Virus record (IMG/VR): IMGVR_UViG_3300020469_003050
Span: 186,001 to 250,000 of that record
DNA length: 64,000 nucleotides
Direction: 5' to 3' (one strand)
In this document: positions 30,207 to 55,252 of the stretch, piece after piece
Layout: every line of letters starts with the position of its first letter
How positions within the stretch are numbered: position 1 is the first letter of the stretch
The notes under the pieces: generated by a model
The model's input: only the letters and a program-made list of their open reading frames with translations
What the model was told of the DNA's origin: nothing
Databases searched by the model: none
Position numbers and translations under genes: made by a program

Positions 30207-30770
30207 ATGACTAAAAAATTAGAAGAAACGTTTAACATTACAGGCGCGGAAGAAGACAAGACATATGAGAATGAAGTTGAACGTGACACACCTTCTATAG
30301 AAGAATCTAACGAAATTACCAAAATCATCAATACTGAAATGAAAAATGCAGAGAAAATCGATGCATCACTTCCTATGGTATCAGATTTAAATGAACATGA
30401 CAGAGAAATGGACGATATTCATGGAAAAGCCATGCAAACATTTGAAGATTTACTGCAATTAGGTATGAATGTAGAAGTACATGCAGGTGCAAAGATATTA
30501 GAGACAGCAAATCAGCTATTAAAGACAGCTAAAGAAGCCAAAGACAGTAAAGTAGACAGAAAACTCAAAATGATTAATCTACAGTTGCAAAAAGCGAAGC
30601 TAGACCATCAAAAAGATAGGGATACTAGCAAAGATGACAACGAATTAGAGTCAGAAGGCTCTCTAAACCTTGATAGAAACGAATTATTGAAGCGAATTGC
30701 TAATGCACAAAAGGTTGCAGATGAAGTAACTGGTAAAAAACCAGAAAAAAATAACAAAAATGATAAATAA
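30207..30770 (+). CDS. Probable terminase small subunit
   Basis: 187 aa, MTKKLEETFNI, FEDLLQLGMNVE, C-terminal DRNELLK; GATAAATA at 30168-30175. Confidence 0.5.
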   Translation: MTKKLEETFNITGAEEDKTYENEVERDTPSIEESNEITKIINTEMKNAEKIDASLPMVSDLNEHDREMDDIHGKAMQTFEDLLQLGMNVEVHAGAKILETANQLLKTAKEAKDSKVDRKLKMINLQLQKAKLDHQKDRDTSKDDNELESEGSLNLDRNELLKRIANAQKVADEVTGKKPEKNNKNDK

Positions 30771-30792
30771 GAGTAGTACGTTGGAGAGCAAC

Positions 30793-31359
30793 ATGAAACA
30801 ATTTAAAGAGTTTTTAACAGAATCAGAAAAAGAACATAAATTCACAATGCGTTTTTGCTGTGAATTAGATACTAATGCAGAAGATAGAATTGAAAAGTTT
30901 TTAGGCAAATATGACCTTAGAACGATGTCAAAAACATCTACTACACCAGTATCAAAAAACCCAATGTTCTTTAAAGAGGTAGAAAATTCAGAAGTATCGA
31001 AGATTGATGTTGTTACAGGTTATCCTGTATCAGCCGATATCTTACGTCAACAACTTTCTGATTTGTTAGGTATGCATTTAACACACGTTGCAGTACATCC
31101 AGAAGGATGGGAACCAACAGAGGAAGAAGCAGAAGAAAACAAAGAAGCAAAACTTACTTCCGAAGAAGAATCAAAATCAGACGATGGTGCAAACTATGGT
31201 CGTACTTTCATAAGTGATTTTCTAAAGTCATTAACACCAAAAGAAACTGACACAGTAGAAAATGAACTAAGTCCGAAAGAAGTACGAGACCAAGCACCAG
31301 AACAAATGGATACAGAAGAAAAATCTAGTCCATCTGTTATCTCAGGAGATAAAAAATGA
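30793..31359 (+). CDS. Internal head protein with capsid-targeting-like N-terminus
   Basis: Start moved to ATG 30793 (GGAG RBS; GATAAATA 30762-30769). MKQFKEFLTE resembles the T4 internal-protein capsid targeting sequence MKTYQEFIAE. Confidence 0.6.
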   Translation: MKQFKEFLTESEKEHKFTMRFCCELDTNAEDRIEKFLGKYDLRTMSKTSTTPVSKNPMFFKEVENSEVSKIDVVTGYPVSADILRQQLSDLLGMHLTHVAVHPEGWEPTEEEAEENKEAKLTSEEESKSDDGANYGRTFISDFLKSLTPKETDTVENELSPKEVRDQAPEQMDTEEKSSPSVISGDKK

Positions 31360-32156
31360 GCAAACATTATAATTTAACTGTTACTGATGATAACGGAAAG
31401 TCAGTTACTACATCGAACACAAGCACAGAACATCCAGAAGAAGTTCTACGTATGATGCAACTTGCAGGTATGCAATCAGAACCACAATGTGGTATGGAAA
31501 GTGTTGAAGAAAACGAATATCAGGCTACACCGGCTAATGACAAGTTAGATTTAGACGATTACTCAAAGAAATCTCCAGAAAGCATTTCAAAACAACCTAA
31601 AAAGTTACAACCTTCAAGAGGCGATAACCCGTTAGAATATTCACTAGATGAAAATGAAATTTTTGAATCTTTAATGAATGAATTTGAAACAGTTGACGAA
31701 GGTAAAGTTAATCCAGGTCTTCAAGCATACCTAGATAAGAAAAAAGGTAAAAAAGATGACAAAGATGACAAAGATGACAAAGTAGAAGAAAAAGCAAAAC
31801 CAGATTTTGCAGATATCGATAAAGACGGCAATAAAAAAGAAACAATGAAAAAAGCGGCTAAAGATAAAAAAGAAAAAGCTGACGAATCAATCAATGAAGC
31901 AAAATGTGATTGTGATTGTGGAAAAGACCCATGTGAAGAATGTGGCAAGTCTCATCATAAAGTAAAAGAAGAAAGCACAGAATTAGCTAGACTAAGAAAA
32001 CTTGCAGGCAACGAAAAAGTAGATGAAGTACTTCCATTGGCGGCAATAGCTGTTGGTAAGGCTGTCGGCGGTGCGGCAAAGTTGGCAGGAAAAGCTATCA
32101 AGCATGGTGCTAAAGCAGTCGGCTCTATGGCGGCGGCTCATAATTCTAACAAATAA
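31356..32156 (+). CDS. Modular internal head protein / putative polyprotein
   Basis: 266 aa with repeated (V/L/I)xE sites, a DIDKDG loop, a Cys-rich motif, LRKLAG and a cationic amphipathic C-tail. Confidence 0.6.
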   Translation: MSKHYNLTVTDDNGKSVTTSNTSTEHPEEVLRMMQLAGMQSEPQCGMESVEENEYQATPANDKLDLDDYSKKSPESISKQPKKLQPSRGDNPLEYSLDENEIFESLMNEFETVDEGKVNPGLQAYLDKKKGKKDDKDDKDDKVEEKAKPDFADIDKDGNKKETMKKAAKDKKEKADESINEAKCDCDCGKDPCEECGKSHHKVKEESTELARLRKLAGNEKVDEVLPLAAIAVGKAVGGAAKLAGKAIKHGAKAVGSMAAAHNSNK

Positions 32157-32694: not shown

Positions 32695-33963
32695 ATGGCA
32701 AAATATCGTGGTTTAACCTGGCAAAATGCCGGAGCAGGACCAAAAGTAAGAGTAAGACGTTCTATCTGGCTGGCAGAATTAGGAGACTTCGGAGCAATTA
32801 CAGACTCCGCAGATGACTTACCAACAAGAGGTGCTCTACACAGAGGTTCTAATGGTTCTACATCAGGTACACGTGGTTATGTAAACCTTTCAACAGTAAA
32901 TGATTTAGCAGTGGTCGATACACAAGACCAAGGACTAATAACAGATACAGCTATATCAGCCGCTATCTGGAAAACAAATTCAGAAAATACAAACGTGGTT
33001 GTCCCAGCAACACAGGCAGATTTTGCAATTCAATCTTCTTCTAACTTTACAAGTTGGAATTTCGGAGACAGTGCAAATCCAGTAAACAGAAGTAATACTA
33101 TGGGCGTTTACAGACTTGCTAAGACTATGCAAACTACCACTTCATCAGGTAATCAAGAACCAGGTGATAGTGGATATGAAGTAGTTACATCGGCAACTGG
33201 TGGTTCAGGTGATACACCTATTATTGGTTGGCGTAGAATCAATAATCCTTCAACATCTTCATCTACAACTTATAGAGTTTACTCATATCAAGCAATGGGT
33301 ATTAGCAGAAACAATGCAACAAACCAAGAGTCAGGTCAACAAGTAATACACGCCTGGGATATTGAAGTTCCGGCAAATGGTGCATTATTTGTAAGACCAG
33401 GACAAAATGCCCAAAGAGGTGTTTGGGGTGATCCAAATAATGGAGGTTCTCTGTCTTACGCAAATAGTTATACAGGCGGTACTGGTGGTGCAGGTCAGAT
33501 AATGATTTATGATCCAAGCGTTTCAACAGGTACAACTATAGACGGTGTTGCAACAAATAGTATTCTTGCTATAACTTCATCAGGAGCAGGAACATCAAGT
33601 AGTAATGGAACAACGACTTCAACAATTACTGCTTCAACTAGTTTTCAGACGTACTATTCAACTGATGGTACAACAAATATTATTCAACAAGGTTCAATGT
33701 CGGGTTCAGCCCCGCCTGCATATATTGAGGCTTACGGTGGTTATCCAAATGGTTCAGGTAGCACAAGTTTACCTAGAAGCGATAATGGGTATACATCAAC
33801 TTATGTGACACCCGTAAATGATTGGGATGGCAGTGAAATAGGTGTAAACTATGGTGCAGTAACTGGAACAAACTATTATTTAGGTGGTAGAGCAAATAGT
33901 ACAAATACTCCAGGACCAAAAGGCAAATTTGTATTTGTATCTGGAGCAGTTAAAGATTCATAA
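32695..33963 (+). CDS. Virion accessory protein A (shared N-terminal anchor, Gly/Ser/Thr-rich payload)
   Basis: 422 aa; first ~102 aa nearly identical to the next ORF; GATAAATA at 32644-32651. Confidence 0.7.
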   Translation: MAKYRGLTWQNAGAGPKVRVRRSIWLAELGDFGAITDSADDLPTRGALHRGSNGSTSGTRGYVNLSTVNDLAVVDTQDQGLITDTAISAAIWKTNSENTNVVVPATQADFAIQSSSNFTSWNFGDSANPVNRSNTMGVYRLAKTMQTTTSSGNQEPGDSGYEVVTSATGGSGDTPIIGWRRINNPSTSSSTTYRVYSYQAMGISRNNATNQESGQQVIHAWDIEVPANGALFVRPGQNAQRGVWGDPNNGGSLSYANSYTGGTGGAGQIMIYDPSVSTGTTIDGVATNSILAITSSGAGTSSSNGTTTSTITASTSFQTYYSTDGTTNIIQQGSMSGSAPPAYIEAYGGYPNGSGSTSLPRSDNGYTSTYVTPVNDWDGSEIGVNYGAVTGTNYYLGGRANSTNTPGPKGKFVFVSGAVKDS

Positions 33964-33975
33964 GGAGATATATAG

Positions 33976-35259
33976 ATGGCAAAATATCGTGGTATAACTT
34001 GGCAGAACTCAGGTGCTGGCCCAAAAGTAAGAGTAAGACGTTCTATCTGGTTAGCGGAACTAGAAGACTTCGGAGTAATAACAGATTCGGCAGATGACTT
34101 GCCAACAAGAGGTGCTCTACACAGAGGTTCTTTAGGAGCAACATCAGGTACACGTGGTTATGTTAACTTATCTACAGTAAACGATTTAGCAGTGGTTGAC
34201 ACACAAGACCATGGACTAATAACAGATACGGCTGTAACAGCCGCATGGAAAACAAATCCAGAAAACACAAACGTTGTCACTCCTTCAACACCTACTTATG
34301 CATTAACACATAATGCAGGAACAAGTGTAAACGAAGGCACAACAATAACATTTACATTTACTACAACACTTGTAGCAGATGGTACTCAATTCTTGACCTC
34401 AATTACTGGGCAACATACTACAGGTAGTAGTTTTGACTTCAACACTGATATCTCTGGTGGCGGTGTCACCGATGGAACACAAGACGGTTCCGCTCCTGGC
34501 TATCCAATTGGAACACAAATAATAACAGTTAATAATAATACTGCTACTTTTCAAATAACAATTAATGCAGATGACATGGATGATGGTACCGGTATAGAAA
34601 GAATTAAAGGCAAGGTTCATAACACAGATTTAAACGGTCTAGCTTTCCCAGCCACAACGGTAGCCGAGACTGCATACATTACAATTAACGACACATCAAC
34701 GTCAACACCAGCACAAGCACGTACTCATTATCTACGTATTACAGGTGCTAGTTATAATACTAGTATAAATTCTTACGTAAATGACCATGTTGACATGTCT
34801 AGTGACCACCCTGATTGGACTGCAAATGGTATGACTACAGACGTAACAATCGTTAAATTTGCACATGCCCCATCAGGTAGAATAATAGAATTAAGTGATA
34901 CAATACCGTCTAATGTGTTTAATTTGACAACTAACAGTGCATATCATATTTGGGGATTAAATGATACTGCATACACGACTATTCATGCACCAACTGGATA
35001 TCGTATATCAGGATTTACAAAAGATTCTCAGACAAGTTATACAAGATGGAACATTGATTATGACGGTTCTCAATTCGGTGCAAGAGCAACAGTACTTGAC
35101 CAATTGTTTGAAGGACAAGTAATTAATAATTATGAAAATACTACATGGCTTACTTTATATGATACTGATGGCTATAAATATGAGTTTTCTCATCATAGAA
35201 GAAGTACAAATGGTTACTCTGACCAGTTCGAATATAACGGCACAACACAAGTATATTAA
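33976..35259 (+). CDS. Virion accessory protein B (shared anchor, Ig/Calx-beta-like domain)
   Basis: 427 aa; same anchor, then TSVNEGTTITFT...TATFQITINADD...ITINDTS. Confidence 0.7.
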   Translation: MAKYRGITWQNSGAGPKVRVRRSIWLAELEDFGVITDSADDLPTRGALHRGSLGATSGTRGYVNLSTVNDLAVVDTQDHGLITDTAVTAAWKTNPENTNVVTPSTPTYALTHNAGTSVNEGTTITFTFTTTLVADGTQFLTSITGQHTTGSSFDFNTDISGGGVTDGTQDGSAPGYPIGTQIITVNNNTATFQITINADDMDDGTGIERIKGKVHNTDLNGLAFPATTVAETAYITINDTSTSTPAQARTHYLRITGASYNTSINSYVNDHVDMSSDHPDWTANGMTTDVTIVKFAHAPSGRIIELSDTIPSNVFNLTTNSAYHIWGLNDTAYTTIHAPTGYRISGFTKDSQTSYTRWNIDYDGSQFGARATVLDQLFEGQVINNYENTTWLTLYDTDGYKYEFSHHRRSTNGYSDQFEYNGTTQVY

Positions 35260-35282
35260 TAATTTTCAACTTATCTAAAATT

Positions 35283-35309
35283 AAAAGGGAGTTTAGGCTC
35301 CCTTTTTTT
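35283..35309 (+). terminator. Rho-independent terminator
   Basis: AAAAGGGAG-TTTAGG-CTCCCTTTTTTT. Confidence 0.8.
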
Positions 35310-35351
35310 ATGCATAAATAGTATTATATTAGAAGTTAATTAGGATAATAC

Positions 35352-36386
35352 ATGATATGGACAGAATGGGATAAACTAACAGAGATTATTGTTGGTTCCA
35401 CTTATGATACAAAGTCTTTAGAACAATTCGATGATACACAATTTGTTGATAGTATGTCAAAGATACTAGAAGAAACAGAGCAAGATTTTCAAAAATTATC
35501 AGATATATTTAAATCAGCAGGTGTTAAAGTTCACAGACCAAATCCTCTACCTTTGAAATCTGAAAGTACAAGACAATGGAAATCAGATTTTCCATATCCT
35601 GCTATATGTCCTCGTGACCATCATATAGTTTATGGAGATACTATTATCAATACTATAGGTGGTGACTGTAATAGATATACTGAAAGTGATTACTTCTTAG
35701 ATATAATGTTAGAAAAACATAAAGAAGGAAGAAACTATATTGCAATGCCTAGACCTTTATTACAATCTCAGTATCAACATTATGAGACAATGGAACCTCA
35801 GATAATGTATCATGCCGCAAATATTATAAAATGCGGAGATACATTAATTCATTCAAGACCTTATAATGATTCTGAAGGCAGAGACTTTGGAGCAAGAGGC
35901 ACAAGAACAGGATTAGATTGGGTAAAAAGAAATATAGGTTGTGAAACTAAATGGATAGAAGTACCTGAGTGTGGACATGTCGATGGTATGTTAGCAATTA
36001 TTAAACCAGGATTACTAATGACATGGAAAGAAGAATATATTCCCGAAGAATTAAAACATTGGGATAAGATTATTTTAACACCATGGGATTTACCTGAGTG
36101 GTTTCATGAAATGAGAATACAACACTTCTATAAAGATAAAGTAGAAAATTGGCTATCACATTGGATTGGATATGTAGACGAAACAGTATTTGATTTAAAT
36201 GTAGTAAGTATTGACGAAAACACAGTAATTACAAATGGTCATGATAAAAGAATTGAAACTGAGTTAAAGAAATATGGTGTAGAAATGATACCGTTTGATT
36301 TTAGACATAAATATTTCTGGGACAGTGGATTACATTGCGTAACACTTGACTTAAGCAGAAATGGAGAAAGAGAAAGCTATGTATAA
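35352..36386 (+). CDS. Amidinotransferase (glycine / inosamine-phosphate amidinotransferase family)
   Basis: TEWDKLTEIIVG start, CPRD, GHVDG..IIKPGLLM, FDLNVVSIDE, C-terminal SGLHCVTLDL with the catalytic Cys; CATAAATA at 35313-35320. Confidence 0.85.
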   Translation: MIWTEWDKLTEIIVGSTYDTKSLEQFDDTQFVDSMSKILEETEQDFQKLSDIFKSAGVKVHRPNPLPLKSESTRQWKSDFPYPAICPRDHHIVYGDTIINTIGGDCNRYTESDYFLDIMLEKHKEGRNYIAMPRPLLQSQYQHYETMEPQIMYHAANIIKCGDTLIHSRPYNDSEGRDFGARGTRTGLDWVKRNIGCETKWIEVPECGHVDGMLAIIKPGLLMTWKEEYIPEELKHWDKIILTPWDLPEWFHEMRIQHFYKDKVENWLSHWIGYVDETVFDLNVVSIDENTVITNGHDKRIETELKKYGVEMIPFDFRHKYFWDSGLHCVTLDLSRNGERESYV

Positions 36387-37152
36387 TGTTGTAATGAGAA
36401 CACCTGAGTGTTTAGTAATTGATGACTTCTTACCAGAAGAAGCACAAGATAAAATTTTAAATCAAGTACAAGTCGATGAGTGGGAACAAACTCAAGGAGA
36501 CGATAAGTTTTGGCATTATACAGATGGTGCAAATTATAAAAATCAAAAGCGTTGGCAAGGTAAATATCCTTATGGTGATAATTGTGATGTTTGGTTTGAA
36601 CATTTTAATAAGTTTTTAAATGAGTATGAGCATATCGGTGACTATGTTGAAGGTGGAAAGTTTGAAGATTATGCAATGCGTTGTCATGCATATCCTGTAA
36701 ACTCAAAAAACCCATGGCATAGTGATTTAGGTTTTACAACATATACGTATTATGTTCATAAAGATTGGCAAATAAATTGGGACTCTACATTATTAATTGT
36801 TCCTATGGGAAGTGTACCAGAATACTCTCAGTGGATAGAATTAATGGAAGGAACAAAACATTATGATAGTTATAAAGAATTACGAAGTCCAATGGAAATG
36901 TTTCAACAAAAAGAAAAGTTTCAATCATTAATAGATAAAGGTGTGGGTACATTTGTAAGTCCTAAACCAAATAGATTAGTATTAATACAAAAGAATTCAG
37001 TACACGGTATTACACGTGTTGATCCAGATGCTGGTGATAATATAAGAGTTACACTCACAGGTGCAATCGGAGAAGTAGGTTGGCGTGATAGAGTTACAAG
37101 ACTAGCAGATGCAGAAATTAAAGAAGACGGAAAAGTCGGAATAAAAAAGTAA
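36379..37152 (+). CDS. Prolyl-hydroxylase-like Fe(II)/2OG oxygenase
   Basis: VIDDFLP, WHSD, YVHKDWQINW, PKPNRLVLI...HGITRV...RVTLTG; overlaps the amidinotransferase stop. Confidence 0.8.
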   Translation: MYNVVMRTPECLVIDDFLPEEAQDKILNQVQVDEWEQTQGDDKFWHYTDGANYKNQKRWQGKYPYGDNCDVWFEHFNKFLNEYEHIGDYVEGGKFEDYAMRCHAYPVNSKNPWHSDLGFTTYTYYVHKDWQINWDSTLLIVPMGSVPEYSQWIELMEGTKHYDSYKELRSPMEMFQQKEKFQSLIDKGVGTFVSPKPNRLVLIQKNSVHGITRVDPDAGDNIRVTLTGAIGEVGWRDRVTRLADAEIKEDGKVGIKK

Positions 37153-38712
37153 ATGGCAGATTTAACTAAAAAAGCATATCAAAAAACAAAGTTCAGTAAT
37201 GCACAACTATTAGAATTTAGTAAGTGTGCAAATGATCCTTTTTATTTTTTAAACAATTATTTTAAAATACAACACCCTACTAAAGGTAGTATGACATATG
37301 ATGCTTATAAATTTCAAAAAGGATTACTGAATTCTTATCATAACTATAGATTTTCTATTTCTATGCTAGGTAGACAGATGGGTAAATCTACTACTGCGGC
37401 AGGTTATCTATTATGGTATGCTATGTTTATGCCAGACCAAACTATTCTAATTGCGGCTCACAAGTATTCAGGTGCTCAAGAAATTATGCATAGAATTAGA
37501 CATGCGTATGAATTATGCCCTGACCACATTAGAGCAGGTGTTACAAGTTATAATAAAGGTAGTTTAGAATTCGATAATGGTTCACGTATCATAGCACAAG
37601 CAACTACAGAAAACACAGGTCGTGGTCTTTCAATTTCTTTACTATACTGTGATGAGTTTGCATTCGTTAGACCTAATATTGCAAAAGAGTTTTGGACTTC
37701 AATATCTCCTACTCTAGCAACAGGTGGTAAAGCAATTATTACTTCAACACCAAACTTAGATGATGACCAATTTGCTCTCATATGGAGTGGTGCTAATAAA
37801 AATATAGATGAACACGGTAATGAAAAAGAGACAGGTATCAATGGCTTTAAACCATTTAAAGCTATTTGGGACGAACATCCTGATAGGGATGAAATCTGGT
37901 CTAAAGAAGAAAGAACACGTGTTGGTGAAGAAAGATTTTTGCGTGAACATGAATGTCAATTTATTGCGTTTGATGAAACACTTGTAGATAGTATCAAACT
38001 TTCTCATTTAGAAGGCAAAGAGCCTCTTATGAAAACTGGGCAAGTAAGATGGTATGAAAAAATTAATAAAAATTCTACTTACGTTGTTGGTCTTGATCCT
38101 GCTATGGGTACTGGAGGAGATTATTCAGCAATCGAAGTTTGGTCTTTGCCAGAATTAGTACAAGTAGCAGAATGGCAAAGTAATCGTACAGATGTAAGAG
38201 GTCAAGTAAAAACAATGCATGATATCCTAACTATCTTAAATGATGAAATGAATGAATTAGGAAATCGAAGACCAGAGATATATTGGTCTGTAGAGAATAA
38301 CTCACTTGGAGAAGCCGCTCTTATTGTTATTGATGAAATGGACGAAGATAAATTTCCAGGTGAATTCTTACATGAACCAAAGAAAAAAGGTATTCAAAAA
38401 GCGATAAGAAAAGGATTTACTACATCTTATAAAACAAAGATAACTGCATGTATGAAATTAAAATCTTGGATTGAGAGTGATAAAATGGTACCACTCAGTA
38501 AGAATTTAATTAGAGAATTTAAGACATTTATTGCAAAAGGTAAAAGTTTCGAAGCAAAATCAGGCGAAACAGACGATTTAGTAAGTGCTACATTGCTTTG
38601 TATCAGACAAATTCAAGTAATATCACGATTCGATGAAGAATTTATGGAGACATTAGGAGAATCACTTGATAGTGAAGACGATTTTAATGACCCTCTTCCT
38701 GTACTATTTTGA
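37153..38712 (+). CDS. gp17: Terminase large subunit (gp17-like)
   Basis: RQMGKST Walker A, LLYCDEFAF Walker B, ITSTP, GLDPAMGTGGDYS nuclease motif, DDLV. Confidence 0.95.
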   Translation: MADLTKKAYQKTKFSNAQLLEFSKCANDPFYFLNNYFKIQHPTKGSMTYDAYKFQKGLLNSYHNYRFSISMLGRQMGKSTTAAGYLLWYAMFMPDQTILIAAHKYSGAQEIMHRIRHAYELCPDHIRAGVTSYNKGSLEFDNGSRIIAQATTENTGRGLSISLLYCDEFAFVRPNIAKEFWTSISPTLATGGKAIITSTPNLDDDQFALIWSGANKNIDEHGNEKETGINGFKPFKAIWDEHPDRDEIWSKEERTRVGEERFLREHECQFIAFDETLVDSIKLSHLEGKEPLMKTGQVRWYEKINKNSTYVVGLDPAMGTGGDYSAIEVWSLPELVQVAEWQSNRTDVRGQVKTMHDILTILNDEMNELGNRRPEIYWSVENNSLGEAALIVIDEMDEDKFPGEFLHEPKKKGIQKAIRKGFTTSYKTKITACMKLKSWIESDKMVPLSKNLIREFKTFIAKGKSFEAKSGETDDLVSATLLCIRQIQVISRFDEEFMETLGESLDSEDDFNDPLPVLF

Positions 38713-38739
38713 TAAATACATCTATAAGGAATCAATAAT

Positions 38740-40185
38740 ATGGCTGTAAATTATTCAACTATCGCAGAAAAAATAATGAGAATTATTCAAGGGAATGGTA
38801 TTCCTTTGAAAATGTTTAATTCTGATAATGGTAAAAGTGTTGCTAATCCAGAGGAAGCAAGATTTTTTTACATTGACGAACCAAACATGATGGTGTCTAT
38901 TGATGAGGGAACTAATGAAGTTAAACTTCATTTTGGTGAAGGCGTTGATATTGATAAACCAAAAGCAGAAAAATTAATGAATAGTTTAAGACAGTTATCA
39001 CGTGAGTACATGTTAGATTTTGACATGCGTTCATTTGGTAAACATATTGAACCTAAAAACTATGCTTATAAATTAGAAAATGATAAGGAGCAGACTATGA
39101 GTGACGTAATGAAAGAAGGCTTATCGCCTTTAGAAGGCTCATCACGTACCAGTCGCCAAACACTAGAAAATGTAAGACTAATCGTCAAACACCGTGCTCC
39201 AGTAAACGAGGAATCACGTGGATCACGTTCTCGTAATATTTCAGCAATCTTTGTTGAAAATGCTGAAGGTGAACGTTTCAAATATCCATATAAACATTTG
39301 AACGGCGCAAGAGCAATGGCGAGACATGTATCACATGGTGGTGTACCTAGCGACATGGTGGGCGAAGCGATTGTGGAACTTTCAACAAACTTAGCAAAAC
39401 TAAAAGAGTTTATGAATGTTGTTAACAAGCAATCACTAATCAACGAAAACAATCGTTCAGTTGTACTAAATGTAAAACGTAGAATGGAATCAATCAAAGA
39501 ATCTATCAAACGTGTACAAGGTGCAAAAGGATATACAAACTTTGTTGAAAAATTAGCAACAACAGAAGCAAAAGAAAATGCTGAAATCACAGAAGATACA
39601 GTAAACAAATATGTTTCTAAATTTACAAAAACAACTTTTGAAGAATCTTTAAGGGATGTTCTTCCGCTTATACATCGTGTAAACGAAGAAGAAATGGAAG
39701 ATAATCGTGCAGACCAAATCTCACGTGTTAGAGAAATCATTGTAGCAAAAGACAAGAAAACAGGTCAAAAGAAAAATAAAATTACTTTTCCTAAAGACCC
39801 TAATGCTGAATACAACTTTGATAAAATCAAAAAACAATATGCTGAACCTCGTAGTCCACAAGAAGCTGAGGAACAGAAGAAACTTATGTTAGCTTTATCA
39901 ATCGATGATTTAGCAGATAGAGTCGATGTTGATACTACAGATGATAACAAACGTAAAAATAAAGGTCACGATAGAGCGGCTGAATTGTCAATGTTCTTAA
40001 TGGATATGGCAAATGCGATTCGTTCAGGTCAAGGTCTTACAAAAGAAAAGATTCAAATGACTGGATACTTAAGAAAATTAGCGGCACAGAGTAACGAAGC
40101 AGTAGAAACTGTGGGTAAACCTGTGAATGAACAATTCGATTCAATGCTTTCAGAAGCATTCGCTAAGTTCGAAATACCAGCATAA
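38740..40185 (+). CDS. Late-expressed virion-associated protein
   Basis: 481 aa; GATAAATA at 38711-38718; SRNISAIFVENAEGERFKYP...GARAMARHV. Confidence 0.6.
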   Translation: MAVNYSTIAEKIMRIIQGNGIPLKMFNSDNGKSVANPEEARFFYIDEPNMMVSIDEGTNEVKLHFGEGVDIDKPKAEKLMNSLRQLSREYMLDFDMRSFGKHIEPKNYAYKLENDKEQTMSDVMKEGLSPLEGSSRTSRQTLENVRLIVKHRAPVNEESRGSRSRNISAIFVENAEGERFKYPYKHLNGARAMARHVSHGGVPSDMVGEAIVELSTNLAKLKEFMNVVNKQSLINENNRSVVLNVKRRMESIKESIKRVQGAKGYTNFVEKLATTEAKENAEITEDTVNKYVSKFTKTTFEESLRDVLPLIHRVNEEEMEDNRADQISRVREIIVAKDKKTGQKKNKITFPKDPNAEYNFDKIKKQYAEPRSPQEAEEQKKLMLALSIDDLADRVDVDTTDDNKRKNKGHDRAAELSMFLMDMANAIRSGQGLTKEKIQMTGYLRKLAAQSNEAVETVGKPVNEQFDSMLSEAFAKFEIPA

Positions 40186-40208
40186 CGTACCAAAAAACCA
40201 ATAAAATC

Positions 40209-40236
40209 AGGGATCCTTAGTGGGTCCCTTTTTTTT
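40209..40236 (+). terminator. Rho-independent terminator
   Basis: AGGGATCC-TTAGT-GGGTCCCT plus T-run. Confidence 0.8.
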
Positions 40237-40270
40237 GTGGAAAAAATTACAAAAAATACGTATTTAACGC

Positions 40271-55175: not shown

Positions 55176-55252
55176 GGACCCGTAGTTCAGCTGGATAGAA
55201 CGCCTGTCTACGAAACAGGAGGTCAGAGGTTCGAATCCTCTCGGGTCCGCCA
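55176..55252 (+). tRNA. tRNA-Arg (anticodon ACG), CCA encoded
   Basis: Acceptor GGACCCG/CGGGTCC, D arm GTTC/GAAC, anticodon arm CCTGT-CTACGAA-ACAGG, T arm AGAGG-TTCGAAT-CCTCT, G discriminator plus CCA. Confidence 0.95.

What the first reader, a model, noticed from the sequence alone, without database searches (positions are those of the whole stretch)
35313..38712. Amidinotransferase and Fe/2OG hydroxylase placed in the terminase late operon
Seen: after a terminator, a late-type CATAAATA precedes amidinotransferase, then an overlapping oxygenase, then terminase large subunit with no gap (37152/37153). Established: amidinotransferases move an amidino group from Arg to an amine; P4H-like oxygenases hydroxylate proteins or small molecules. 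Inference: late timing points to modification of virion proteins or packaged material (for example Lys-to-homoarginine or polyamine amidination) rather than early metabolic support.
Basis: partly seen in the sequence, partly recalled or inferred. Interest (0 to 1): 0.6.

Follow-up and report, generated by a model that had tools for sequence, protein, structure and literature searches.

The report
Enzyme cassette inserted before phage terminase
A marine jumbo phage carries a coupled pair of enzymes (an arginine-dependent amidinotransferase and a prolyl-hydroxylase-like oxygenase) that was slipped in between the terminase gene and its late promoter; the pair is real and common in ocean viruses, but where it sits does not show that it modifies virions or packaged DNA.

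Summary
A terminator hairpin (35283-35309) is followed by CATAAATA (35313-35320), a 344-aa amidinotransferase (AT, 35352-36386), an overlapping 2OG/Fe(II) oxygenase (OX, probable start 36379, end 37152) and TerL (ATG at 37153).

Pfam misses AT and OX. AT matches HsvA, StrB1, SxtG and AGAT (profile E about 1e-63, TM 0.71-0.75). OX folds like OGFOD1 and bacterial or HIF prolyl hydroxylases and keeps HxD...H...R.

(N)ATAAATA is a real promoter class in this 342.6-kb phage: it lies upstream of 44 genes against 1.9 expected, including every identifiable virion gene checked.

Phages with 91-94% identical TerL lack AT-OX here. In them the same terminator, promoter and leader sit directly before TerL. 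AT-OX is therefore a strain-variable cassette inserted into TerL's leader, and its late timing is borrowed.

In other viral contigs AT-OX travels with a PLP aminotransferase-like gene and a cluster rich in radical-SAM and hydroxylase genes. This genome keeps such a cluster at 94-113 kb.

Most likely the pair tailors an amine-bearing small molecule or glycan precursor (amine to guanidine, plus hydroxylation). Protein or polyamine modification is not excluded. All 83 viral ATs examined have His or Glu where AGAT has its triad Asp.

The parts
35283..35309 (+). Intrinsic terminator closing the upstream fibre-like gene: stem AAAAGGGAG/CTCCCTTTT, loop TTTAGG, run of 7 T
   Evidence: Sequence. The hairpin was found by the scan. 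RNA-library contigs end at 35243-35291. Relatives have a different hairpin at the same place.
35313..35320 (+). Late-type promoter core CATAAATA. It is TerL's ancestral promoter and now drives AT-OX-TerL
   Evidence: Motif class (N)ATAAATA lies upstream of 44 genes against 1.9 expected. It precedes sheath, tube, adaptor and virion genes. An identical element sits directly before TerL in AT-less relatives.
35342..35345 (+). AGGA ribosome-binding site, 6 nt before the AT start codon
   Evidence: Sequence.
35352..36386 (+). Amidinotransferase (P0001, 344 aa) of a virus-specific clade. D89, H209, D211 and C329 are kept; His154 stands where AGAT has Asp254
   Evidence: PDB phmmer StrB1 5e-22. Profile HsvA 1.8e-63 and StrB1 5.8e-63. 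Fold TM 0.71-0.75. Residue counts.
36379..37152 (+). 2OG/Fe(II) oxygenase, P4H/OGFOD1-like (P0002; longest ORF starts at 36361, probable start 36379). Overlaps the AT stop by 8 nt
   Evidence: pLDDT 91 model. PHD2/P4H by Foldseek, E about 1e-8. OGFOD1 Z 17.2 and PPHD Z 16.1. H120, D122, H215 and R229 are invariant. Homologues carry PF13640.
37153..38712 (+). Terminase large subunit. Its ATG abuts the OX stop (TAAATG)
   Evidence: Pfam Terminase_6N 2e-16 and phrog_36964 3e-139. Junction. The same ATGGCAGA start is used in AT-less relatives.
38711..38718 (+). Second late motif GATAAATA, overlapping the TerL stop, serving the next virion gene
38740..40185 (+). Virion structural protein; last gene of the unit
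   Evidence: phrog_13484 4e-29. Heavily represented in RNA-library contigs.
40209..40237 (+). Terminator ending the late unit, followed by a sigma-70-like promoter for gp32
   Evidence: RNA-library contigs end at 40087-40190.
32695..35259 (+). Two paralogous fibre/RBP-like genes (conserved N-terminus, unrelated C-termini). With AT-OX they fill the variable island between gene 31356-32156 and TerL

Best explanation
AT and OX form a translationally coupled two-gene accessory cassette, 35352-37152. In this phage lineage it was inserted between TerL's own late promoter/leader and TerL's start codon. It is therefore transcribed late as P(late)-AT-OX-TerL, and TerL is probably translated by coupling to the OX stop.

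Shown:
- The gene layout and the identity of both enzymes.
- The promoter class.
- The insertion and its strain variability.
- The conserved AT-OX pairing.

Inferred mechanism:
- AT takes the amidino group of L-arginine onto Cys329 (helped by His209, with Asp89 and Asp211 holding the guanidinium), releases ornithine, and passes the group to a primary amine to make a guanidine.
- OX uses Fe(II) and 2-oxoglutarate to hydroxylate the same substrate or a neighbouring intermediate.
- Across viral contigs the most constant partner of AT is a PLP aminotransferase-type enzyme, and the pair usually lies in radical-SAM/hydroxylase clusters. The distant ATs of Campylobacter phage CP220 and cyanophage S-SCSM2R lie in clusters that also hold glycosyltransferases. 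This genome's own cluster at 94-113 kb adds a carbamoyltransferase and a weak glycosyltransferase-2 match.
- The most likely role is thus a branch of a phage-encoded tailoring pathway, carbonyl to amine to guanidine plus hydroxylation. It would act on a small molecule or sugar/glycan precursor made late in infection. It is not part of the packaging machine.
For: Layout and junctions.

AT is a true amidinotransferase homologue with the catalytic Cys, His and both Asp kept.

OX is a P4H-like double-stranded beta-helix with an intact metal and 2OG site.

Promoter classes: the late motif lies upstream of 44 genes against 1.9 expected. It precedes sheath, tube, adaptor, fibre-like and virion genes. 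gp32 has a sigma-70-type promoter, and the early CTTGACA class marks other genes.

Insertion: AT-less phages with 91-94% identical TerL have the same terminator, T-run, GCATAAATA and leader directly before ATGGCAGA of TerL.

Pairing: AT followed by OX in 31 viral loci spanning 52-100% AT identity.

Partners change with AT identity:
- 75% or more: OX and TerL.
- 52-72%: OX and the PLP-like gene c3.
- 35-44%: radical SAM and c3.
- 29-34%: a class-III aminotransferase (Pfam 3e-44).

c3 has invariant Asp, Ser-x-x-Lys and Arg and a weak Aminotran_1_2 match.

This genome keeps c3, at least nine radical-SAM genes, Asp/Arg-hydroxylase-like genes, a weak below-cut-off GT2 match and a NodU-type carbamoyltransferase at G000 94-113.5 kb.

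Similar modules in unrelated phages:
- CP220: AT among radical-SAM genes with two sugar transferases (PMC2853527).
- S-SCSM2R: ORF309 sits among glycosyltransferases, a sugar aminotransferase-type gene and a radical-SAM gene. ORF266, next to KdsA/KdsB, is followed by an overlapping 2OG oxygenase.

Precedent for an aminotransferase feeding an amidinotransferase: pheganomycin (PMC8939145), and streptidine biosynthesis from my own knowledge.

Expression: RNA-library contigs identical to the window bridge the AT/OX junction and stop at both terminators.
Against: - No substrate was identified; the pathway logic comes from gene neighbourhoods.
- OX's top structural neighbours are protein prolyl hydroxylases, although small-molecule enzymes such as PolD are within 2 Z units.
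- Several partner families (SPASM radical SAM, Asp/Asn hydroxylase, ATP-grasp) often act on peptides.
- The PLP partner may consume the ornithine by-product rather than make the acceptor amine.
- His154 replaces the triad Asp of characterised amidinotransferases, so the chemistry may differ.
- In this genome c3 lies about 125 kb from AT-OX.
- Logan contigs cannot prove a single transcript or its timing.
- The predicted AT-OX complex gave no answer.
Confidence: 0.5

Rival explanations
1. AT and OX modify virion or other proteins late in infection (Lys to homoarginine, Pro or other hydroxylation), perhaps together with the peptide-type radical-SAM, Asp/Asn-hydroxylase and ATP-grasp enzymes seen in related clusters.
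For: - Late-type promoter.
- OX's nearest folds are OGFOD1 (ribosomal protein prolyl hydroxylase, Z 17.2), the Pseudomonas P4H that acts on EF-Tu (Z 16.1) and HIF prolyl hydroxylases.
- In S-SCSM2R an AT homologous to P0001 (4e-20) and a 2OG oxygenase were detected in CsCl-purified virions (PMC12801897).
- Partner families that commonly act on peptides.
- The cassette sits next to fibre-like genes.
Against: - Every characterised amidinotransferase matched (HsvA, StrB1, SxtG, AGAT) acts on small molecules.
- A PLP aminotransferase-type partner is the most conserved neighbour.
- The genome has no collagen-like Gly-X-Y proteins.
- The cassette is absent at this site in near-identical phages.
- The S-SCSM2R authors themselves suggest carry-over of abundant proteins.
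- The S-SCSM2R oxygenases are not detectably similar to P0002.
Confidence: 0.22
2. AT amidinates polyamines (putrescine or spermidine to agmatine-like or diamidino forms) that are packaged as DNA counter-ions, which would explain its place beside TerL.
For: - HsvA, a polyamine amidinotransferase, is the top PDB match by profile and by fold.
- The genome encodes SpeD.
- SpeD lies within four genes of AT in L033, L060, L065 and L078 (two genes upstream in the last three).
- AT is co-transcribed with TerL.
Against: - HsvA and StrB1 are statistically tied (1.8e-63 against 5.8e-63).
- The position beside TerL is an insertion that phages with 91-94% identical TerL lack.
- A 347-kb relative has no AT.
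- The genome has no spermidine synthase.
- The conserved OX and PLP partners have no obvious role.
Confidence: 0.1
3. Arginine breakdown for nitrogen and carbon. The AT-family enzyme mainly serves to turn arginine into ornithine (amidino group passed to a cheap acceptor or to water). Ornithine then goes by an aminotransferase and PutA to glutamate; OX consumes 2-oxoglutarate.
For: - A class-III aminotransferase (the family of ornithine aminotransferase) is the standard neighbour of the more distant viral ATs.
- The AT paralogue at G000:330460-331698 lies about 2.3 kb from a full PutA.
- His or Glu replaces the triad Asp in all 83 viral ATs.
- Arginine dihydrolases ArgZ/AgrE share the fold.
Against: - ArgZ/AgrE matches are far weaker than the amidinotransferase matches (E about 1e-10 against 1e-25).
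- No ornithine aminotransferase was found in this genome.
- This reading does not explain the tight AT-OX coupling or the radical-SAM and sugar-enzyme context.
- Late timing is odd for resource mobilisation.
Confidence: 0.1
4. DNA base hypermodification. The pair, with the radical-SAM cluster, decorates a modified base with a guanidino or hydroxyl group, as in thymidine or 7-deazaguanine hypermodification.
For: - Campylobacter phages with fully modified DNA carry an AT in a radical-SAM module.
- A ThyA-family gene lies beside this genome's radical-SAM cluster.
- PLP and radical-SAM enzymes take part in known thymidine hypermodifications (my own knowledge).
Against: - The genome has no TGT/DpdA.
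- The ThyA match is an ordinary full-length thymidylate synthase hit.
- The 7-deazaguanine papers read here mention the word amidinotransferase only in cited references on archaeal tRNA.
- No hydroxymethyl-base kinase was looked for.
Confidence: 0.05

Closest known systems
HsvA (Erwinia amylovora polyamine amidinotransferase, PDB 5wpi) and StrB1 (Streptomyces inosamine-phosphate amidinotransferase, 1bwd); also SxtG and human AGAT
   Same: Same fold (TM 0.71-0.75). Profile E about 1e-63. Same PRD, HxD and C-terminal HC(x)T motifs, hence probably the same Cys-amidino ping-pong chemistry with arginine as donor.
   Different: Only 19-24% identity. The Pfam model does not detect it. His154 stands where all four have the triad Asp. 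There is a family-specific insert at about residues 245-280. The acceptor is unknown.
Synechococcus phage S-SCSM2R ORF266-ORF267 (and ORF309)
   Same: A phage AT homologous to P0001 (E 4e-20, shared C-terminal FRHxYxWDxGLHCxT motif), followed by an overlapping 2OG/Fe(II) oxygenase. ORF266 was detected in purified virions.
   Different: T4-like cyanomyovirus. The AT is shorter (297 aa). Its oxygenases show no detectable similarity to P0002. It lies next to KdsA/KdsB and psbA, not TerL.
Campylobacter phage CP220/CPt10 radical-SAM + amidinotransferase module
   Same: A distant AT (25% identity, E 9e-17) embedded among radical-SAM genes and sugar transferases. It was described as an interchangeable accessory module.
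   Different: No P4H-like oxygenase is annotated beside it. Different phage family and host. Function is also unknown.
OGFOD1/Tpa1 and bacterial PPHD / HIF PHD2 prolyl hydroxylases
   Same: Best structural neighbours of OX (Z 14.6-17.2, about 180-190 aligned residues). Same HxD...H...R site.
   Different: 13-17% identity. Small-molecule oxygenases (PolD, SnoK, HalB) score nearly as high. No substrate-binding elements could be compared.
T4 late promoter TATAAATA
   Same: An A/T-rich -10-type element with no -35 box, placed 23-67 nt before the start codons of virion genes.
   Different: The first base is mostly G here (C before TerL/AT). Neither timing nor a gp55-like sigma factor was tested.

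Membership tests
Amidinotransferase family (AGAT/StrB1/HsvA; pentein fold) | Significant sequence similarity to characterised members | tested here: met
   phmmer: StrB1 5.3e-22, SxtG 7e-21, HsvA 4e-19, AGAT 6e-13. Family profile: 1.8e-63 to 7e-53.
Amidinotransferase family (AGAT/StrB1/HsvA; pentein fold) | Match to the curated Pfam model | tested here: not met
   No Pfam family even at E 10. Only phrog_25854, 'unknown function'. This shows limited model sensitivity, not evidence against homology.
Amidinotransferase family (AGAT/StrB1/HsvA; pentein fold) | Pentein fold | tested here: met
   Model pLDDT 90.7. Foldseek E 5e-26 to 4e-23 and TM 0.68-0.75 to the four amidinotransferase structures; DDAH, ADI and ArgZ come next.
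Amidinotransferase family (AGAT/StrB1/HsvA; pentein fold) | Catalytic Cys in the C-terminal HC(x)T motif, catalytic His with Asp in HxD, and the guanidinium-binding Asp of PRD | tested here: met
   C329, H209, D211 and D89 are invariant in 41 family members and in all 83 viral ATs examined. They align to the equivalent residues of AGAT and StrB1.
Amidinotransferase family (AGAT/StrB1/HsvA; pentein fold) | Third triad residue Asp (AGAT Asp254 in FDAA(D/N)) | tested here: not met
   The aligned residue is His154 (YHAAN). It is His in 35 of 41 family members, and His or Glu, never Asp, in the 83 viral ATs that align there; the in-genome paralogue has a gap at that column.
Amidinotransferase family (AGAT/StrB1/HsvA; pentein fold) | Transfer of the amidino group from L-arginine to an amine | not testable with these tools
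   Needs an enzyme assay.
2OG/Fe(II) oxygenase, prolyl-4-hydroxylase-like (PF13640) | Double-stranded beta-helix fold | tested here: met
   Model pLDDT 91. PHD2/P4H by Foldseek, E about 1e-8. OGFOD1 Z 17.2.
2OG/Fe(II) oxygenase, prolyl-4-hydroxylase-like (PF13640) | HxD...H iron triad and a basic residue for the 2OG C5 carboxylate | tested here: met
   H120, D122, H215 and R229 are invariant in 40 sequences. The role of R229 is assigned by position only.
2OG/Fe(II) oxygenase, prolyl-4-hydroxylase-like (PF13640) | Match to the curated Pfam model | tested here: inconclusive
   P0002 itself has no Pfam hit. More than 20 homologues at 45-62% identity carry PF13640.
2OG/Fe(II) oxygenase, prolyl-4-hydroxylase-like (PF13640) | Hydroxylation of peptidyl proline | not testable with these tools
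   Fold neighbours include both protein and small-molecule oxygenases.
T4-type late promoter | ATAAATA core upstream of virion genes, enriched over chance | tested here: met
   44 upstream regions against 1.9 expected. It precedes sheath, tube, adaptor, fibre-like and virion protein genes. It is conserved before AT or TerL in diverged relatives.
T4-type late promoter | Late timing and dependence on a phage late sigma factor | not tested
   No time-course data. No search for a gp55-like protein. RNA-library contigs show presence only.
Terminase large subunit (T4-like) | N-terminal ATPase and C-terminal RNaseH-like nuclease domains | tested here: met
   Terminase_6N 2e-16; Terminase_6C 4e-4 (just below its cut-off); phrog_36964 3e-139.
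7-deazaguanine DNA modification system | DpdA/TGT-family transglycosylase | tested here: not met
   No PF01702 match in the 342.6-kb genome; the controls were positive.
Polyamine amidinotransferase (HsvA type) | Closer to HsvA than to other amidinotransferases, with a polyamine pathway context | tested here: inconclusive
   HsvA ranks first but ties with StrB1. SpeD is present and spermidine synthase absent.

The most novel reading that the evidence does not exclude
A virus-specific clade of amidinotransferases, with a Cys-His-His/Glu active site instead of Cys-His-Asp, works with a prolyl-hydroxylase-like oxygenase to guanidinylate and hydroxylate macromolecules late in infection. The targets would be virion proteins (Lys to homoarginine) or packaged polyamines. 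To my knowledge that would be the first enzymatic protein amidination. It would also be a new kind of virion chemistry common in ocean myoviruses (more than 500 matches in IMG/VR).
Probability: 0.15. Interest if true: 0.85.

Novelty: new variant of a known kind. Interest (0 to 1): 0.5.

Why it matters
It occurs in at least three unrelated phage groups, and no function is known for it.

This work contributes four things:
- The family has a conserved partner logic: a PLP aminotransferase, plus a P4H-like oxygenase in one subclade.
- It has a clade signature, His or Glu in place of the triad Asp.
- In this lineage it behaves as a mobile cassette that captured the terminase promoter.
- There are natural strains with and without the cassette, and cultured carriers (S-SCSM2R, CP220), so the biochemical question can be tested directly.

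It is also a caution. Operon position beside a packaging gene can come from insertion into a permissive leader rather than from shared function.

Tried and rejected
- Pfam on both proteins gave nothing, even at E 10.
- CATAAATA as a bare 8-mer is not enriched: 3 against 7.1 expected. It was replaced by the genome-wide motif analysis.
- Complex prediction for AT with OX gave no answer (score 0.00). It is evidence neither for nor against binding.
- A collagen-like (Gly-X-Y) substrate for a P4H: none in the 407 ORFs.
- hhalign of the OX family against S-SCSM2R ORF267 and ORF269 found no meaningful similarity.
- The small conserved neighbour c4 gave nothing in the PDB profile search and only viral hypotheticals in the ESM Atlas.
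- The PDB profile search for c3 gave only weak PLP fold-type-I matches; the TAL-effector rows are repeat artefacts.
- Rfam found no riboswitch (for example guanidine) in the window, only a tRNA.
- Genome searches found no TGT/DpdA, no spermidine synthase and no psbA.
- The late motif upstream of the radical-SAM cluster could not be assigned cleanly, because the TATAAATA there overlaps the end of a small ORF. The timing of that cluster is left open.
- Searching AT-less relatives for AT elsewhere in their genomes was uninformative, because four of the five records are fragments.
- Literature searches found no functional study of phage amidinotransferases.
- No alternative genetic code was used.

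Full report
WHERE THE WINDOW LIES. The window is bases 186001-250000 of a 342,607-bp IMG/VR virus record with direct terminal repeats and 35% G+C. Its TerL is closest to those of jumbo myoviruses such as PA5oct, Atu_ph07 and the Rak2-like phages. It has no psbA. RNA and DNA libraries that hold it are marine.

THE OBSERVATION. A hairpin at 35283-35306 followed by a run of T (35303-35309) closes the upstream gene. CATAAATA lies at 35313-35320 and an AGGA ribosome-binding site at 35342-35345; AT starts at 35352.

The longest oxygenase ORF starts at 36361. The family consensus begins MYN.., and GGAGAAAGAG precedes the ATG at 36379, so that is the likely start. It overlaps the AT stop by 8 nt (ATGTATAA). 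The gene coordinates in L004/L005 and L007/L008 give the same 8-nt overlap. The OX stop and the TerL start read TAAATG.

WHAT THE PROTEINS ARE: AT. Pfam finds nothing for either protein, even at E 10. P0001 nevertheless matches StrB1, SxtG, HsvA and AGAT directly, at E 5e-22 to 6e-13. As a 41-sequence profile it matches them at 1.8e-63 to 7e-53. Its model (pLDDT 90.7) superposes on those four structures with TM 0.68-0.75, and the hydrolases of the same superfamily rank well below.

The PRD Asp (D89), the HxD pair (H209, D211) and the C-terminal His-Cys (H328, C329) are invariant. One feature departs. Where AGAT, StrB1, SxtG and HsvA have F-D-A-A, with the Asp that completes the Cys-His-Asp triad (that assignment is from my own knowledge of the AGAT structure papers), P0001 has Y-H-A-A. 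That position is His in 35 of 41 family members. It is His or Glu, never Asp, in the 83 viral ATs that align there; the paralogue in this genome has a gap at that column.

WHAT THE PROTEINS ARE: OX AND TerL. P0002 gives a confident model (pLDDT 91). By Foldseek it resembles PHD2 and bacterial P4H. By the exhaustive aligner it resembles OGFOD1 (Z 17.2), the Pseudomonas P4H that hydroxylates EF-Tu (16.1), animal PHDs (15-16), PolD (15.0) and Tpa1 (14.6). H120, D122, H215 and R229 are invariant, and many homologues carry PF13640. TerL is a standard T4-type large terminase.

THE PROMOTER. As a bare 8-mer, CATAAATA is not enriched in the window. A scan of all 176 gene-upstream regions of the genome shows two strongly enriched classes:
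- ATAAATA, mostly GATAAATA: 44 regions against 1.9 expected.
- AACTTGACA with an extended -10 box: 25 regions against 1.2 expected.

The first class precedes tail sheath, tail tube, head-tail adaptor, fibre-like and virion structural genes. The SSB gene has a sigma-70-type promoter. This fits a T4-like late promoter (comparison from my own knowledge). Neither timing nor a late sigma factor was tested.

In relatives whose AT is 75% identical, the hairpin sequence is completely different, but the layout of hairpin, T-run, GCATAAATA and about 30 nt to the ATG is kept.

Contigs from marine RNA libraries that are identical to the window do three things:
- They cover the flanking virion genes heavily.
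- They end inside the two terminators (35243-35291 and 40087-40190).
- They include pieces bridging the AT/OX junction in two samples from two studies.

This agrees with the predicted unit. Contigs cannot prove a single transcript, and DNA carry-over cannot be excluded.

THE INSERTION. Fetching 79 TerL loci showed a conserved backbone: gene 30760-31359, gene 31356-32156, a variable island, TerL, a virion protein and SSB. The island holds zero to three fibre-like cassettes, with or without AT-OX.

Phages whose TerL is 91-94% identical (L118-L123, L127/128, L136/137, L168) have no AT-OX there. Neither do the relatives at 79-81% or 52-64% TerL identity. In the AT-less close relatives, a hairpin, the T-run, (T)GCATAAATA and a short leader sit directly before the ATGGCAGA of TerL. 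The same elements precede AT in the carriers, and part of the leader is alignable.

The 1.8-kb AT-OX block was inserted between TerL's leader and its start codon. Late timing is inherited by position. A 94%-complete 347-kb relative has no AT homologue at all.

WHAT TRAVELS WITH THE PAIR. I clustered the genes of 80 loci. The neighbours change with AT identity to P0001:
- 75% or more: OX and TerL.
- 52-72%: OX plus a 280-300-aa PLP-like protein (c3). This is either an isolated AT-OX-c3 unit or part of a large cluster of radical-SAM/SPASM genes, Asp/Arg-hydroxylase-like genes, another 2OG oxygenase, an ATP-grasp enzyme and desaturases.
- 35-44%: radical-SAM genes and c3, without OX.
- 29-34%: a small unknown protein (c4) and a class-III aminotransferase, sometimes SpeD.

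c3 has an invariant Asp, a Ser-x-x-Lys and an Arg, and weak Aminotran_1_2 and ACC-synthase-like matches.

This genome keeps the large cluster elsewhere, at G000 94-113.5 kb on the minus strand. It holds c3, at least nine radical-SAM genes, two Asp/Arg-hydroxylase-like genes, a 925-aa protein with a weak, below-cut-off GT2 match and a NodU-type carbamoyltransferase. So the pair seems to have moved out of that cluster to the TerL leader.

Unrelated phages show similar modules:
- CP220 and CPt10 have an AT among five radical-SAM genes; in CP220 two sugar transferases and a PAP2 phosphatase lie beside them. Timms et al. described this as an interchangeable module (PMC2853527).
- In cyanophage S-SCSM2R, one AT lies among glycosyltransferases, a sugar-aminotransferase-type gene and a radical-SAM gene.
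- Another S-SCSM2R AT, ORF266, lies next to KdsA/KdsB and is followed by an overlapping 2OG oxygenase. ORF266 is homologous to P0001 (4e-20). It was found, with the oxygenase ORF269, in purified virions (PMC12801897).

MECHANISM. Shown: homology, intact catalytic residues, coupling of the two genes, the promoter class and the insertion.

Inferred:
- AT forms a Cys329-amidino intermediate from arginine, releases ornithine and transfers the group to an amine.
- OX hydroxylates the same substrate or a neighbouring intermediate.
- A PLP aminotransferase is the most constant partner, and sugar-type enzymes accompany the distant ATs of CP220 and S-SCSM2R (here a carbamoyltransferase and a weak GT2 match). 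I therefore favour a tailoring route of carbonyl to amine to guanidine with hydroxylation, acting on a small molecule or sugar/glycan precursor.
- This parallels the aminotransferase/amidinotransferase steps of pheganomycin (PMC8939145) and of streptidine (my own knowledge).

I put about 0.9 on the structural and insertional part and about 0.4 on this biochemical reading.

RIVALS.
- Protein modification. It is supported by OX's protein-hydroxylase neighbours, the S-SCSM2R virion proteome and the peptide-type partner families. It is weakened by the PLP partner, the lack of collagen-like proteins and the small-molecule substrates of all characterised relatives.
- Polyamine amidination. It rests on HsvA ranking first (tied with StrB1) and on SpeD. 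It loses its main argument once the TerL adjacency is seen as an insertion.
- Arginine breakdown. It is suggested by the class-III aminotransferase partner and by a PutA near the AT paralogue at G000:330460-331698.
- DNA hypermodification. It has little support, since the genome has no TGT.

NOVELTY AND SCORE. Amidinotransferases in phages have been noted before (2010, 2025), and both enzyme families are well known. New here are:
- the conserved, translationally coupled AT-OX cassette;
- its partner logic;
- the His/Glu signature of the viral clade;
- its capture of the terminase promoter as a strain-variable insertion.

The function is still open. I rate it a new variant of a known kind, with interest 0.5.

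Noticed in passing
window 32695-33963 and 33976-35259: Two adjacent paralogues whose first 105 residues are 88% identical and whose C-terminal 300 residues are unrelated. A late motif precedes the first. This looks like swappable fibre or receptor-binding cassettes. Relatives carry zero to three of them in the same island.
   Followed up: partly
G000:C1:330460-331698 (L091:6460-7698) and its neighbours at 325283-331698: A second, distant amidinotransferase paralogue (about 27% identity). Its neighbours are a c4-like gene, a small protein matching the C-terminal domain of arginyl-tRNA-protein transferase (E 1.4e-6), DUF6614, a phosphoribosyltransferase and a full PutA (proline dehydrogenase plus aldehyde dehydrogenase) preceded by a late motif. 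Together they look like an arginine/proline-centred island.
   Followed up: partly
G000:C1:94007-113466, minus strand (L090): A 19-kb cluster of at least nine radical-SAM genes, two Asp/Arg-hydroxylase-like genes, a PLP-like gene, a 925-aa protein with a weak GT2 match and a NodU-type carbamoyltransferase. A ThyA gene lies just beside it at 92723-93568. Its product and timing are unknown.
   Followed up: partly
whole genome G000: Two sharply defined promoter classes: AACTTGACA-N-TGTTATATT (sigma-70-like, presumably early) and (G)ATAAATA(C/G) (late-like). They could be used to partition the whole genome into timing classes.
   Followed up: partly
window 36361-37152; Synechococcus phages S-CAM4 and ACG-2014j near 97.3 kb: phrog_19810 and the RefSeq records call homologues of the oxygenase's C-terminal half 'DNA endonuclease V'. 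Given the 2OG-oxygenase fold and motifs, that name looks like an annotation error.
   Followed up: no
L006 (NCBI GCA_030427805.1, 916,837-bp contig): An AT homologue (41% identity) sits among four or five radical-SAM/SPASM genes and two Asp/Arg hydroxylases on a 917-kb contig that also encodes a protein kinase. The nature of that replicon (giant virus or cell) was not examined.
   Followed up: no
window 55176-55252: A tRNA-Arg (anticodon ACG) gene, the only Rfam or ARAGORN hit in the window.
   Followed up: no
window 37153-38712: The best PHROG for TerL (phrog_36964) is an 890-position profile, and TerL matches only its positions 435-882. Some relatives therefore have a TerL with a long extra N-terminal part that is absent here.
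   Followed up: no
L106, L110-L117 against the window at 36379-37152: Two oxygenase alleles circulate among phages whose AT is 94-96% identical: one about 99% and one about 83% identical to P0002. The second leaves a 15-nt gap before TerL instead of the abutting TAAATG.
   Followed up: no
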